This document shows, one piece after another, positions 16,536-21,236 of a DNA stretch of 64,000 nt. The stretch covers positions 2,356,001-2,420,000 of the forward strand of contig JBLDXI010000033.1 of assembly GCA_047495785.1 (NCBI GenBank). The letters run 5' to 3'. A program made the position numbers and the translations under genes. The notes beneath the pieces are model-generated. The model saw nothing but the letters and a program-made list of their open reading frames with translations, was not told where the DNA came from and did not search any database. The first letter of the stretch is position 1; the number at the start of each line of letters is the position of its first letter. This stretch comes from Lepidodermella squamata. Its lineage: Eukaryota; Animalia; Gastrotricha.

Positions 16536-17327
16536 GTTCAACGCTGCAGAAGAAAAGGTGAAAGAAAAAATTGTGATCTTATAATGAAATGGTTGTAAAT
16601 ACATAATATCGCTAAAATTCCTTTGATCTGCATGCAGAACTATCTAAAAACAAGGGCAATGTTATTGAAAAGCGATGCCACCAAGTCGCAAGTAAAAATT
16701 TCATAGAAACCATGCATTCATGAGTGTAATGCAAAGAAAAATATCCAAGGGACATGATGTGTTGGTATGGGCCGTTCTTCAGTACGGAACGCTGAAAACT
16801 TCGAAAGGGCGCAAACCGAGCCCCAAAGGTTTCATCACCAGGATTCGACATTGCTGGGCTACGTAGGTATGAATGAATCGAATTTAGTAAAAAATAAAGG
16901 CGTGGTCATTAGTCGCCTCTGTGTATTGCTGGTTGCTGGTACGATGCAGCAGCATTGCCCGCCGACATTGACTGCTAGCTAGTCTCAATGAGTTCATCCA
17001 GGCTGCAAGCAATTCGCTGCCAGCCTGCCATGACAACACCGCAACTATTCGAGCCGAAGTTGCGTGTGACATGCAGCATGTGAAGAGTGCCGAGAAATTA
17101 TTGACCGTCTGCAAGGCAGCCAATACCTATCAAGATTTGTCGCTCGCGTACGGTCTATTCTAGTCTCCAAGTCTGATTGTGAGCGATGGTTCAGCTTTGT
17201 TGGCCAAGAGGTGTTCAATGGCCTAAGAAACTCGCTTAACTCGATTAACTCGCGCTTTCTCCTCTGGCTTTTTAAATTTTTCCAAAGGACCAGCTTTTTC
17301 GCGTAAAGCCGTATATTTTCGGTCTTT

Positions 17328-17805
17328 TCACCGGTTTCTAGTGCCGTAAATTGGGGTGACTTTGGCCTATCAAAAATCGAAAGTTGAAAGGTAAAGACCC
17401 CATTAGTGGGGTACCGTTGGATAGTAGAAAAACGGGTTCTCCGAAAAATGGCTTATGATTTCAATTTATATTAGGCGGATTCGGTTGAGCAGCGACGGAA
17501 GTTTACCGGAAATAAAATTCGGCATTTTTACCCAAACCTTGCCTCTTATTTCTTGTCCCGAAATAGGTTGCATTGATGTGAAGATTCCAGGCGAGCCTTT
17601 TCTTGGGCTCAAAAAGGCTTGTGTTCGGCCTCATCGTTGAGGTAAATCGTATTTCATTGCATTTTCTTGCGTACGGTCTCAAATAAACACGAGTCGTTTG
17701 GGAATCGAAGTCATTATCTGAGTATAAATTCCGAACACTGAGCCGAGAGACGGGTAATTTCGAAAGAATTGGGAGTTTCGATACTAACGATCTACCTCCT
17801 AACAT
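17328..17805 (-). CDS. Uncharacterised ~128-aa protein with a mitochondrial presequence-like N-terminus
   Basis: Exons 17805-17507, 17451-17415, 17366-17328 joined by 55- and 48-nt GT-AG introns in frame. Arg/Ser/Leu-rich, acid-free N-terminus. Confidence 0.55.
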
Positions 17806-17993
17806 TACAAAAATATACGCAGCACAAAGAAGCCGCTATCTACTAGCCTATTCGCAACTCATAAGCGTTCCAAATAATTAAATGAAAAAATAATATGATC
17901 CATGTTCATTCCTTTTATTCTGCTCAATCTTTCTCACCGCCTTTCATCGAAAGCTCTCATGGGCACCATAAAACGTAAATATTTATTTCGAAG

Positions 17994-19222
17994 TTAATCG
18001 AACAAGCTCAATGACATTTCCTCCTCTTCCTCGGGTTCTTCCTTCTTAGGCTCCTCCTTCTTCTTGCCAGCGTCAGCGGCAGGAGCTGAAAACAGTGAAT
18101 TATATAATGAAGTTAATTGAAATATGCCGATGAACTAACCAGCTGCGGCAGGCGCAGCAGCAGCGGTCAACGCTGCCAATTTGCTAGGATCAGACAACAA
18201 ATCCTTCAGCTTGTCAGCGGCCGGGAAGCTGATATCGGTAGCGAGGGCAAGTGCCAAGATCTTCTTGTAAGCACCAGCAATCATATGCGGGGCGGAGGCC
18301 AAGCATGGGTAGTTGACAGCCAAGCAAACAGCGGCCAGATCGGCAACACCCTATAACGGCAACAAACCACGATTCAAATATAGAACAACATTTAACAATT
18401 GTTCTCTTACGTGGCAGAACTTGCTCTTCAGCTCAGCATCGGTGATGTCCAAAACTTCGGGGTCGAACAAAGTTCCGTTGTCGTAGACTATTCAAGGGGG
18501 ATATTAACTGAAATCAATGGCAAAATGGAATAAAGCCAACCTTTGCGGATGACAAGACCGTATGAGAAGGGGTGAATCTTCAACATGTTGAGGAGCGTAG
18601 CCTCGCTGGCACCGACCTTTTCACCTTCCTTGATGAGCTTGACGTCATTCTGGAAGAAGAAGAGCAAGCGATATAAGTATTCATCGTTAGAAAGTTATGT
18701 TACCAAGATTTCAATTGTTCCCTTGCTGATCTTGGTTTGGATTTGCAGAGCCTGGAAGAAAGAAGTCTTTTCAGGGCCCAGACCAGTGTTCTGGGCTGGA
18801 ACGATGACATCACAAGGGGCGATAGCGCCGGCCTTCGCAGGGGCGGAAATCTTGTTGGCAACAATTTTCTCCTTGATGTCGCAGGCGTCTTCGCGGGTGA
18901 AAACGAGGCCAACGTTGCCCTTCAGATGGGTCATGATCCTGAAAAAAAACGAGTGTCAAATTAGTACTAAAACTCGAGATATTAGTGCTAACTTTTCGAG
19001 ATTGGGGTTCTTCTGAATATGACCCCTCATCGCCTTCTTCATCATGGTGTTCTTGCCCATGAGGAGCTCAGCTTGACCACGCAGAGACTTGCGGATTTGC
19101 TGCATTTGGTTAGAGCGGACGTTGTCAATACCGACAACGAAGCACTTGGGATAGTCGTCGAAAAGTCGAACGACGCGGATAAAATAGTTAGCCTTCCATG
19201 TTGATCTGTCTTCCTTGACCAT
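17994..19222 (-). CDS. RPLP0: 60S acidic ribosomal protein P0 (uL10)
   Basis: [35 protein letters not shown], Ala-rich hinge and acidic tail ending LFD; multiple ~50-nt introns. Confidence 0.97.
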
Positions 19223-19466
19223 CTTTGTGATTCAGGGATTTCCCGACGGGTTTAAAGACGGATAATTTTATGAACAAATGATTAAGGTAATAAAACCTAT
19301 GAAGGAAAATAAAAACATGCATTATGATTAGCCAATTTATTTTTAGCCAGGCAAAAAAAAACGAACGAATTAATAAAGAGGGTAGTAGACTGCTACAAGT
19401 TCATTTTCAAAGGAAACATCAGCTACTGTTATCAAATAAAATAATCGAGTTCAAGTTAGTAACTCC

Positions 19467-20286
19467 TCACTTGGCAGGGATACGAGTGTTTTTATTCCAA
19501 GCGAAATTAGCAGCGTAAGACTTGGGCTTTAGGTGCGGCTGATGACGCTGCTCAACATTGTATTTATATCCCATCCGCTTGCAATATGCAACAGCATCTT
19601 CCAGAGATGAGAATTCGATGTGTAATCCTGAAAGTGGATCAGCGCTGAAAGGAAATAAACTCATGACGCAGACGTCTTAAGCAAAGCAGAAATTCTAACC
19701 TCGAAGTCCAGCCCATTGTCGGATTTTCCCATCGTTCTTGGGCATCAAACTGGACTCTCCATTTGCGGGTTGCGAAAGATCCAGATTGCATGGCGTTTCT
19801 AGCAGGAGAAAAGATGCGCGCTTCTCGAAGCGTGATTTGTTCAGTCGGAACGCCACTCAACATAGAAAAGTCCTAAAACGACAATATAATGCTACAGTTT
19901 TACCATTTGAAATGTGAATTTACTTGGAGAATCGGAACATCAACCAGCTTTTGAGTCTTGGAGCTCTCCGATTTAATCTGATCGAGTAGAGGATCGCAAC
20001 CTTGATTGCGGTTTTCTTTCCATTCACTTTCCAATCTATTACGATGATCTTTAAAGCGATGGCGAGTGTCGTCCTTCTTTTCGAATTCAGGGACATCGGG
20101 ATGGGTAACTTTGAGTTGAGCGTGCTCATACTCCTTGTTGTAATTCCGTGTCCTAAGAAAGGCATCGTTTAAAAAATACTCGGAACAAATAGAGGCCTAA
20201 AGCTCAACTCACTGAATTAAAGCCGGCAGACCGGTCCTTTGAGATCCAAAAACAAATCTGCATATTTGTGTGGATCGAATCATCAT
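19467..20286 (-). CDS. NDUFS4: NADH dehydrogenase iron-sulfur protein 4
   Basis: ARIFSPARNAMQSG, ERWENPTMGWTS-SADPLS, KPKSYAANFAWNK; multi-exon. Confidence 0.93.
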
Positions 20287-20499
20287 TGCACGATGAAATA
20301 TCAACTGCGCTCTTGTATGACAGACGATAAAACTGAAAAAAGCAACGCAAAAAACGAAGCATGGCAAATGCGGTCACCTGAATGAAGGGATTTTTCTAAA
20401 ACTCTATATGTTCTTTTAATTATAGAATATGTAGACTTTGATTAAGTAATAAATATGAATTCGATCGACTATTGTTGAAAAATAATTGAAGCCGGGGCT

Positions 20500-20507
20500 T
20501 GACGTCA
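20500..20507. promoter_or_regulatory. CRE palindrome in the divergent NDUFS4/COPB2 promoter
   Basis: TGACGTCA between head-to-head genes; function is inferred only. Confidence 0.25.
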
Positions 20508-21236
20508 CCGTTCAGCGGCTGTTTCATGTCCACATCACCGGCATCTCTCTTTTGGCTCCAGGCTCCAAGTGGCTGTCATGGTTGTATTTTGGATGTATCC
20601 TCTAGCGGTCGTTAGCCGTAATCCGGAAATTGAAACTATCTTAAACTTCGTAGTTATGGCATTTTTGCTCATGATTACTTAACTAGAAAGGAGGCGTCCT
20701 GCGTCCCGTTGATATCTGAAATCCAATCAAGCAGTGTTGCGATGTGCAACGCGGACCATCTAACATTTCCCTATTCGAGAGCTCACTTGTTCTTGGCGTT
20801 TTAAGTAAGTATCCGTAACAACATAGATGTTGTTTTGTGTTTTATTCCATTTTCCGTTGCTTCTAAACATTCGAGAGCCTGAAGAAACGTGATTCGTGAT
20901 TTTCCAAGAATATCTCCGCTGTTTCATTATACTATTGACTTTTGTTTTGCATTGGCGCCACAGACTTTGTTTTCCTTTCTTAATTCTACTGGTTTACCGT
21001 GGCAGTGATCTAGGATCTCCAGCTGGAATGACTAATAAATATGTTTAGCCCTAATCAGTATACTCATACTCTCTCTCTCTCTCTCTCATTTATAAAATTA
21101 TCTAACTGTAGTCCAAGCATATCGTCGGGCGACTGGCGATTGGGCTGATGAATCCATCCATTCATCATTTTTGCCTGTTGATAGCGTTGGTAATACGTTC
21201 TGTGTGCTTAGATATATTGATTACTGAAAATCAAGT

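What the first reader, a model, noticed from the sequence alone, without database searches (positions are those of the whole stretch)
19228..19262. Apparently deeply conserved RNA element in the RPLP0 5'UTR
The minus strand reads CGTCTTTAAACCCGTCGGGAAATCCCTGA, 9 nt before the ATG. From memory, the human RPLP0 leader has CGTCTTTAAACCC-N8-AATCCCTGA at a similar distance. Such UTR conservation in a fast-evolving compact genome implies function. Bacterial and archaeal uL10 autoregulate through mRNA leaders, so this could be an undescribed eukaryotic uL10 feedback element. The human match is recalled, not searched.
Basis: partly seen in the sequence, partly recalled or inferred. Interest (0 to 1): 0.7.

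Follow-up and report, generated by a model that had tools for sequence, protein, structure and literature searches.

The report
Ancient RNA element before RPLP0 start
The messenger RNA for ribosomal stalk protein P0 carries, just before its start codon, a short two-box signal with a small hairpin that is kept from insects to fish and mammals. It looks like an undescribed partner of the ancient signals already known in the other two stalk genes, and what it binds is still unknown.

Summary
The minus strand at 19260-19232 reads exactly as reported and ends 9 nt before the ATG of an RPLP0 (uL10) gene. The only correction is that the spacer is 7 nt here, not 8.

The recalled human match is backed by two published human RPLP0 primers. 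About 80 independent P0 mRNAs or genes also carry the same layout. They include a rodent-like mRNA, teleost fish (hake), thrips, diamondback moth and three relatives of the window species. The layout is: box A GUCYUUAAA, a variable hairpin (0-40 nt) with compensatory changes, box B AUCCYURA, NN-CAC, then AAG-AUG.

The element acts in RNA, not as a promoter. In this genome the mRNA is trans-spliced about 37 nt upstream of box A. In insects and fish an intron acceptor lies 0-11 nt upstream, and the TOP-like tract sits in a separate exon.

Rfam has no match. I found no paper describing the element. The closest known things are the deeply conserved 5'UTR elements of RPLP1 and RPLP2 (Davies 2015), which do not include RPLP0.

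The uL10-feedback idea is untested, and I saw no sequence mimicry of the 28S stalk-base rRNA. My verdict is a genuine, probably new member of a known kind. Earlier notes of this scan reported spliced-leader trans-splicing in this genome, and I confirm it at this gene.

The parts
19297..19298 (-). AG of the spliced-leader acceptor (pyrimidine tract, then TAG). The mature P0 mRNA body starts at 19296-19298; 2 nt are ambiguous because the leader also ends in AG.
   Evidence: contigs of runs X1 and X10 follow the genome up to 19298. They then continue with foreign letters, which in mRNA sense read ...AATATTAAATTTTCTG. The X2 contig also ends there. Depth is 0 at 19310-19330.
19260..19296 (-). Upstream, poorly conserved part of the 5'UTR, between the leader junction and box A.
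   Evidence: this stretch diverges among the window, L001 and L177/L178, while the element downstream is nearly invariant.
19251..19259 (-). Box A, GTCTTTAAA (consensus G-T-C-Y-T-T-A-A-A).
   Evidence: the column counts are G54/72, T66/72, C67/73, Y74/74, T72/74, T71/74, A72/74, A74/74 and A72/74.
19242..19250 (-). Hairpin P1: CCC (19250-19248), loop GTC, GGG (19244-19242). It is followed by the linker AA (19241-19240).
   Evidence: Searches show covariation and excess folding. Relatives change only the loop. An alternative pairing of GGG with the CCC of box B is also possible in this species.
19232..19239 (-). Box B, ATCCCTGA (consensus A-T-C-C-Y-T-R-A).
   Evidence: the column counts are A55/68, T62/70, C71/71, C64/71, C57/72 (T15), T70/72, G38 or A29 of 72, and A55/70.
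19227..19229 (-). The CAC triplet, two bases after box B.
   Evidence: C50/60 and A54/62 at the aligned columns.
19223..19225 (-). AAG directly before the start codon (-3 to -1). Together with A(+1) and U(+2) it can pair with box A.
   Evidence: A75/76, A69/76 and G73/76. The predicted closing helix is shown.
18992..19222 (-). RPLP0 exon 1, from the ATG at 19222-19220. The gene runs on through five short introns to the stop TAA at 17996-17994.
   Evidence: PF00466 and PF17777; relatives carry PF00466.

Best explanation
This is a gene-specific cis-regulatory RNA element in the mature 5'UTR of RPLP0 mRNA, conserved at least across Bilateria. Its layout is box A (GUCYUUAAA), a hairpin of variable length and sequence, box B (AUCCYURA), two bases and CAC, a 5-18 nt tail, then AAG and the AUG.

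Shown:
- Both boxes are conserved.
- The hairpin covaries.
- The position is fixed relative to the AUG rather than to the 5' end of the mRNA.
- The element is retained after trans-splicing or cis-splicing.

Inferred:
- The two pyrimidine-rich boxes, brought side by side by the hairpin, form the docking platform for a conserved trans-acting factor.
- Binding this close to the AUG tunes translation initiation of P0. It may work by stabilising a pairing of box A with AAG-AU that buries the start codon.
- The element probably belongs to the same ancient regulatory layer as the RPLP1 and RPLP2 5'UTR elements, which would keep the three stalk proteins in balance.

The factor is unknown. I put the stalk protein or complex itself at about 0.2, and another RNA-binding protein at about 0.5.
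For: - **Breadth:** Unbiased retrieval of P0 loci by protein returned 80 loci, and essentially all of them carry the element just before the ATG.
- **Model search:** Model R1 finds 75 leader sites among the 79 loci searched, plus the window site. In 159 kb searched on both strands there is one weak off-target hit. In 45 kb of named hake, moth and thrips loci it finds only the pre-ATG site.
- **Hairpin:** On a sequence-only alignment of 63 leaders the covariation score is 0.315 against 0.115 for shuffles (0 of 500 reach it) and at most 0.099 for slid controls. In per-sequence folding, 40% reach p<0.05, with Fisher p = 5.5e-12.
- **RNA level, this genome:** Spliced-leader junction at 19296-19298, about 37 nt upstream of box A.
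- **RNA level, other taxa:** The intron acceptor abuts box A in thrips and moth. In hake the acceptor is 11 nt upstream, and the TOP-like tract lies in exon 1. Seven contigs carry a common leader joined just before box A.
- **Close relatives:** They keep the boxes and stem but change the loop, the tail and the upstream UTR.
- **Start-codon pairing:** An 8-bp helix is predicted in the window leader (z = -2.0). The pairing is predicted in 17 of 72 leaders against 2 of 72 controls with box A shuffled.
- **Precedent:** The RPLP1 and RPLP2 5'UTR elements (PMC4613772).
Against: - No binding factor or effect on translation has been shown.
- RNAalifold finds no consensus structure on the plain alignment. 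The hairpin is only 3-5 bp, and it is absent where the spacer is 2-4 nt, as in the leader-spliced (copepod-like) group.
- The pairing of box A with the AUG is weak or needs a bulge in the GUCCUU class. It cannot be tested by covariation, because its 3' strand is fixed by the start codon.
- The link between box A position 4 and base -4 (p = 4e-4) is not corrected for phylogeny.
- AAGAUGG could simply be a favoured start context (TISU-like).
- Taxon labels exist for only a few loci. Most are unnamed metatranscriptome contigs.
Confidence: 0.75

Rival explanations
1. Autogenous feedback. Free P0, or the P0-(P1-P2)2 complex, binds its own leader and blocks initiation. This would be a eukaryotic counterpart of bacterial L10(L12)4 control of rplJL.
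For: - The element sits in the uL10 leader right at the AUG.
- P0 is an rRNA-binding protein.
- Only the stalk genes are reported to have such ancient 5'UTR elements (PMC4613772), which suggests stalk-specific control.
- Start-codon occlusion is predicted in many leaders.
Against: - There is no Rfam L10-leader match.
- The best matches of box A and box B in eukaryotic rDNA lie outside the stalk-base helices H42-H44.
- The RPLP1 and RPLP2 motifs differ from the P0 boxes. One protein binding all three leaders is therefore not obvious.
- No experimental report was found.
Confidence: 0.2
2. A generic pyrimidine-tract control element. It would act as an internal TOP-like or PRTE-type site, or as sites for PTB/PCBP/LARP-type proteins, shared with other ribosomal protein mRNAs.
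For: Both boxes have a UCYYU pyrimidine core followed by purines. Variants such as UCUCU and UCCUU occur. The gene belongs to the translation apparatus.
Against: - The element is not at the cap.
- Conservation extends to AAA, the hairpin, CAC and AAG. That is far more specific than a pyrimidine tract.
- The 2015 screen found such depth only for stalk genes.
- The model hits nothing else in 64 kb of this genome.
Confidence: 0.15
3. A DNA-level core-promoter element, either a TCT/polypyrimidine initiator at the transcription start or a downstream promoter element.
For: GTCTTT resembles the TCT initiator consensus of ribosomal protein genes (my own knowledge).
Against: - In this genome the mRNA starts by trans-splicing about 37 nt upstream.
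- In thrips, moth and hake an intron separates the element from the promoter.
- The hairpin covaries at the RNA level.
Confidence: 0.03
4. Chance resemblance or compositional artefact.
For: None beyond the shortness of the motifs.
Against: Shuffles expect 0 matches. About 80 independent loci carry the element. The window site scores E 9e-6 with a model not trained on it.
Confidence: 0.01

Closest known systems
[quoted passage not shown]
   Same: - The element lies in the 5'UTR close to the start codon of a stalk-protein gene.
- It is built from several short, nearly invariant motifs with variable spacing.
- It is shared by protostomes and deuterostomes.
- The RPLP1 element also seems to hold a GCN...NGC hairpin between its motifs. 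That is my reading of their supplement.
- RPLP2 motif 1 (GACTTAAAAG) shares CTTAAA with box A.
   Different: - It is a different gene: RPLP0 is absent from their table of 322 elements.
- The motif sequences differ.
- The shared 6-mer is near chance by my rough estimate, about 0.05 after counting the comparisons made.
- Presence in non-bilaterians is shown for RPLP1 and RPLP2 but was not tested for RPLP0.
Bacterial L10 leader (Rfam RF00557) and other autoregulatory ribosomal-protein leaders
   Same: The position in the leader of the uL10 gene next to the start site. Start-site occlusion is a plausible mechanism in both.
   Different: There is no sequence or structure match, no rRNA mimicry was detected, and binding by uL10 is not shown.
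5' terminal oligopyrimidine (TOP) motif and TCT initiator of ribosomal protein genes
   Same: A pyrimidine core (CTTT or CCTT) in a ribosomal protein gene leader.
   Different: The element is not at the cap or the transcription start. It lies downstream of a trans-splice or intron junction. In hake a separate TOP-like tract sits in exon 1.
TISU (translation initiator of short 5'UTR, SAASATGGCGGC; my own knowledge)
   Same: CAAGATGG before and across the start codon matches the first half of TISU.
   Different: The 5'UTR is not short. The second half (CGGC) is absent. Vertebrate P0 has GTGATGCCC instead.

Membership tests
Stalk-gene 5'UTR conserved elements (Davies 2015 kind) | Lies in the 5'UTR within about 150 bp of the start codon of a ribosomal stalk gene | tested here: met
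   Box A starts 37 nt before the ATG of RPLP0 and lies inside the mature mRNA.
Stalk-gene 5'UTR conserved elements (Davies 2015 kind) | Conserved between protostomes and deuterostomes | tested here: met
   Found in hake, a teleost-cluster mRNA L024, rodent-like L010, human primers, Thrips palmi and Plutella xylostella, and the window invertebrate.
Stalk-gene 5'UTR conserved elements (Davies 2015 kind) | Several short invariant motifs separated by variable spacers | tested here: met
   Box A, box B, CAC and AAG. The spacer is 2-29 nt (up to about 40) and the tail is 5-18 nt.
Stalk-gene 5'UTR conserved elements (Davies 2015 kind) | Present in non-bilaterian animals (Cnidaria, Placozoa, Porifera, Ctenophora) | not tested
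Bacterial-type uL10 autoregulatory leader | Match to the described leader RNA family | tested here: not met
   Rfam 15 at E up to 10 on 17000-21000, and at gathering threshold on the whole window, gave nothing relevant.
Bacterial-type uL10 autoregulatory leader | Leader mimics the uL10 binding site on large-subunit rRNA (H42-H44) | tested here: not met
   Tested at sequence level only. PWM scans of 14 eukaryotic rDNA contigs put the best box A and box B matches outside the stalk-base region (rRNA context). Structural mimicry was not tested.
Bacterial-type uL10 autoregulatory leader | uL10 (complex) binds the leader and represses its own synthesis | not testable with these tools
   This needs binding and reporter experiments.
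5' TOP motif / TCT initiator | The pyrimidine tract begins at the capped first nucleotide or transcription start | tested here: not met
   A leader junction lies about 37 nt upstream in this genome. Introns lie between the promoter and the element in thrips, moth and hake.
Structured RNA element (general) | Base pairs supported by compensatory changes | tested here: met
   The three core pairs of P1 show all four Watson-Crick types. Covariation exceeds 500 of 500 shuffles and all slid controls on an alignment not fitted to the structure. The model-fitted alignment agrees.
Structured RNA element (general) | A single consensus fold predicted from the alignment | tested here: not met
   RNAalifold on the plain alignment gives no pairs. 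The helix register differs between lineages, and some lineages lack the hairpin.

The most novel reading that the evidence does not exclude
The RPLP0 element and the RPLP1 and RPLP2 5'UTR elements together form one ancient, stalk-specific post-transcriptional regulon. In this reading a single factor, possibly the free P0-P1-P2 complex itself, reads all three leaders next to their start codons and sets stalk stoichiometry. That would be the long-missing eukaryotic analogue of bacterial L10(L12)4 autoregulation.
Probability: 0.15. Interest if true: 0.85.

Novelty: new member of a known kind. Interest (0 to 1): 0.65.

Why it matters
Non-coding sequence shared by insects and vertebrates is very rare. 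The best published cases sit in the 5'UTRs of RPLP1 and RPLP2. Finding a third such element, with a covarying hairpin, in RPLP0 completes the trio of stalk genes. It points to a dedicated and very old control of stalk-protein synthesis that nobody has explained.

It also gives a compact RNA of about 45 nt for pull-down, CLIP mining and reporter tests. That makes the question of whether eukaryotes have stalk autoregulation directly testable.

Tried and rejected
- **Fixed N8 pattern:** no match, because the spacer is 7 nt.
- **Rfam:** nothing at any threshold.
- **RNAalifold on the plain alignment:** no consensus, so I used a named helix with controls instead.
- **Promoter, TOP or TCT reading:** rejected by splice and leader junctions.
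- **rRNA mimicry:** I recalled CCCUGAA in 28S H42 and confirmed that the string exists in eukaryotic large-subunit rRNA. PWM scans show it is not the best or a specific match, so I dropped it.
- **Pairing of box B with the 18S 3' end:** the commonest variant, AUCCCU, has a mismatch. I judged this by eye only and dropped it.
- **Upstream CUG start or frameshift site (UUUAAAC):** not conserved across variants, and there is no upstream reading frame.
- **Taxon labelling through 90% clusters:** only the teleost cluster carried names.
- **Paper searches for the motif in RNA letters:** 0 hits. DNA-letter hits were qPCR primers.
- **Word search with exon 1:** it found only 8 fragments because of its length window.
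- I did not build the joined full-length protein of the window gene.

Full report
**1. What is in the window**

On the minus strand, 19260..19232 reads CGTCTTTAAACCC GTCGGGA AATCCCTGA. It is followed by ATCACAAAG and an ATG at 19222. The ORF behind the ATG is RPLP0/uL10. Exon 1 (18992-19222) matches PF00466 and the next exon matches PF17777. The gene has five introns of about 50-60 nt and ends ...MSLSLFD, with the stop at 17996-17994. The upstream gene on the same strand is NDUFS4-like (PF04800).

The spacer between the two halves is 7 nt, not 8. Rfam finds nothing relevant, either locally at E up to 10 or at gathering threshold across the window.

**2. The human recall**

I fetched no human contig. 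Two papers print human RPLP0 primers that together cover the recalled string: TCGTCTTTAAACCCTGCGTG (PMC3689658) and TGGCAATCCCTGACGCACCG for NM_001002.3 (bioRxiv 10.1101/2020.07.13.200022).

A metatranscriptome contig, L010, carries the same layout with an 8-nt spacer. I take it for rodent rather than human. The basis is its C-terminus ...AEAKEES and one base in the spacer, compared with my memory of mouse and human.

**3. Breadth of conservation**

An exon-1 word search gave 8 fragments. An alignment of these was used to fetch P0 loci from metagenome and metatranscriptome contigs by protein only, so the sample is not biased towards the motif. This returned 80 loci, mostly full-length mRNAs of about 1.1 kb with 40-130 nt of leader.

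Printing the leaders shows the same design in essentially all of them:
- Box A is G-T-C-Y-T-T-A-A-A.
- A variable spacer follows.
- Box B is A-T-C-C-Y-T-R-A.
- Two bases and CAC follow.
- A tail of 5-18 nt (median 9) comes next, then AAG and the ATG.

Column counts in the model alignment are near-invariant. For example, A is 74/74 at box A position 8, C is 71/71 at box B position 3, and G is 73/76 at -1. The spacer ranges from 2 to 29 nt, with a median of 12 and about 40 nt in L077.

Labelled taxa are:
- the teleost cluster of L024;
- the hake genome;
- Thrips palmi mRNA and genome;
- Plutella xylostella.

Three relatives of the window species also carry the element. L001 has 95% amino-acid identity and the same NDUFS4 neighbour. 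L177 and L178 have 77% identity. All three keep the boxes and the stem while the loop, the tail and the upstream UTR change.

**4. The hairpin**

The spacer usually forms a 3-5 bp hairpin whose sequence differs between lineages. Examples are TTGC/GCAA, CAC/GTG, CACTA/TAGTG, CTAC/GTAG, CCG/CGG, GCT/AGC and CCC/GGG.

- In per-sequence folding against shuffles, 40% of 55 distinct spacers reach p<0.05, with Fisher p = 5.5e-12.
- On the plain MAFFT alignment of 63 leaders, which is not fitted to any structure, the named helix has a covariation score of 0.315. Shuffles give 0.115 (0 of 500 reach the observed value) and slid partners give at most 0.099. All four Watson-Crick types occur at the three core pairs.
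- The model-fitted alignment agrees.

There are limits. RNAalifold alone predicts nothing. The register differs between lineages. A leader-spliced group has only 2-4 nt between the boxes and no hairpin. This fits a hairpin that serves as a variable insert bringing the two boxes together.

**5. Specificity**

Model R1 was built from 23 leaders, not including the window.
- It finds 75 leader sites among the 79 loci searched.
- It finds the window site at E 9e-6.
- It gives one weak off-target hit (E 0.63) in 159 kb on both strands.
- In 45 kb of hake, moth and thrips genomic loci, the only hits are the pre-ATG sites.

**6. RNA level, not promoter**

Read laying did not refuse the stretch. Contigs of X1 and X10 follow the genome to 19298 and then carry foreign letters, which in mRNA sense read ...AATATTAAATTTTCTG. 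X2 also ends there, and depth is 0 at 19310-19330. A pyrimidine tract and TAG precede this point. So P0 mRNA is spliced-leader trans-spliced about 37 nt upstream of box A. This agrees with earlier notes on this genome.

Other taxa give the same answer:
- L177 and L178 show two different leader-like 5' ends joined at one point.
- Seven marine contigs share a common 5' leader joined 0-6 nt before box A.
- In thrips and moth the acceptor ...gcag abuts TCCTTAAA.
- In hake the acceptor lies 11 nt upstream, and exon 1 holds a TOP-like CTCTCTCTTC.

The element is therefore positioned relative to the AUG and not relative to the cap. It is neither the TOP motif nor a TCT initiator.

**7. Mechanism**

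The window leader folds with an 8-bp helix between CCGUCUUU and AAAGAUGG, which buries the AUG (-16.3 kcal/mol, z = -2.0). Across 72 leaders, G(-1) pairs with box A at P>0.5 in 17, against 2 when box A is shuffled. The mean probability is 0.28 against 0.10, with Wilcoxon p = 0.009. Box A position 4 (U or C) goes with base -4 (A or not), with Fisher p = 4e-4, uncorrected for phylogeny.

This is a lead and not proof. The GUCCUU class would need a bulge. The 3' strand cannot covary. AAGAUGG may simply be a good start context.

My best reading is that a factor binds the two UCYYU-RAA boxes beside the AUG and tunes initiation. Its identity is open.

**8. The uL10-feedback idea**

I obtained a tool-derived eukaryotic large-subunit stalk-base sequence and structure. 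It came from the Rfam alignment on L091, a contaminant rDNA contig in a cyanobacterial assembly. PWMs of box A and box B were scanned over 14 such rDNA contigs, and the best matches lie outside H42-H44. There is therefore no sequence mimicry. Structural mimicry and binding remain untested.

I did not determine the origin of these contaminant contigs. I took none of them for human, and I made no further use of them.

**9. What is known**

Davies et al. 2015 (PMC4613772) described the oldest animal non-coding elements then reported, in the 5'UTRs of RPLP1 and RPLP2. RPLP0 is mentioned there only as the binding partner, and it is absent from their table of 322 elements. Their supplement gives the motifs, and these differ from the P0 boxes apart from a shared CTTAAA with RPLP2 motif 1.

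Other searches, by keyword and by motif string, found nothing on an RPLP0 element. The library holds open-access papers only, so an earlier description elsewhere cannot be excluded.

**10. Verdict**

The element is best filed as a new member of the known kind "ancient stalk-gene 5'UTR element", with a covarying hairpin as an added feature.

Noticed in passing
window 19296-19298 (minus strand); L177:1-19, L178:1-9: The P0 mRNA of this genome receives a spliced leader ending ...AATATTAAATTTTCTG(AG). A freshwater metatranscriptome relative has the variant ...TATTTCTG. Relatives L177 and L178 show two different leader-like 5' ends (...TTGTCTAAG and ...ATATTTGAG) joined at the same point.
   Followed up: partly
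window 19341-19441: Run X1 has a discrete 92-nt contig at 19341-19432 and a loose end of A's 'behind' 19441, which is the orientation of a plus-strand poly(A) tail. It lies between the NDUFS4-like stop and the P0 acceptor. Rfam gives only a sub-threshold snoR113-like match at 19344-19426 (+) with E 0.81. It may just be the NDUFS4 3'UTR plus a priming artefact.
   Followed up: no
L082:2460-2500, L174:2960-3000, L021, L069, L074 (acceptors just before box A): In several arthropod-like P0 genes the 3' splice site of a 5'UTR intron lies directly at the first base of TCCTTAAA. Box A is therefore the very start of exon 2.
   Followed up: partly
PMC4613772 supplementary file 3, against the Rfam LSU_rRNA_eukarya consensus shown on L091:3880-4200: RPLP1 motif 1 reads GAGCTAAGGC in mRNA sense. 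It shares the 7-mer GCUAAGG with the 28S stalk-base sequence CCGCUAAGGAGUG. The RPLP1 element also seems to hold a covarying GCN...NGC hairpin between its motifs. Either could be chance.
   Followed up: no
This indicates widespread eukaryotic rDNA contamination of those assemblies.
   Followed up: no
L172:2590-2630: Hake RPLP0 exon 1 begins with a TOP-like CTCTCTCTTC tract and ends at ...GCGAG|GTAAC. The TOP tract and the P0 element are therefore on separate exons.
   Followed up: partly
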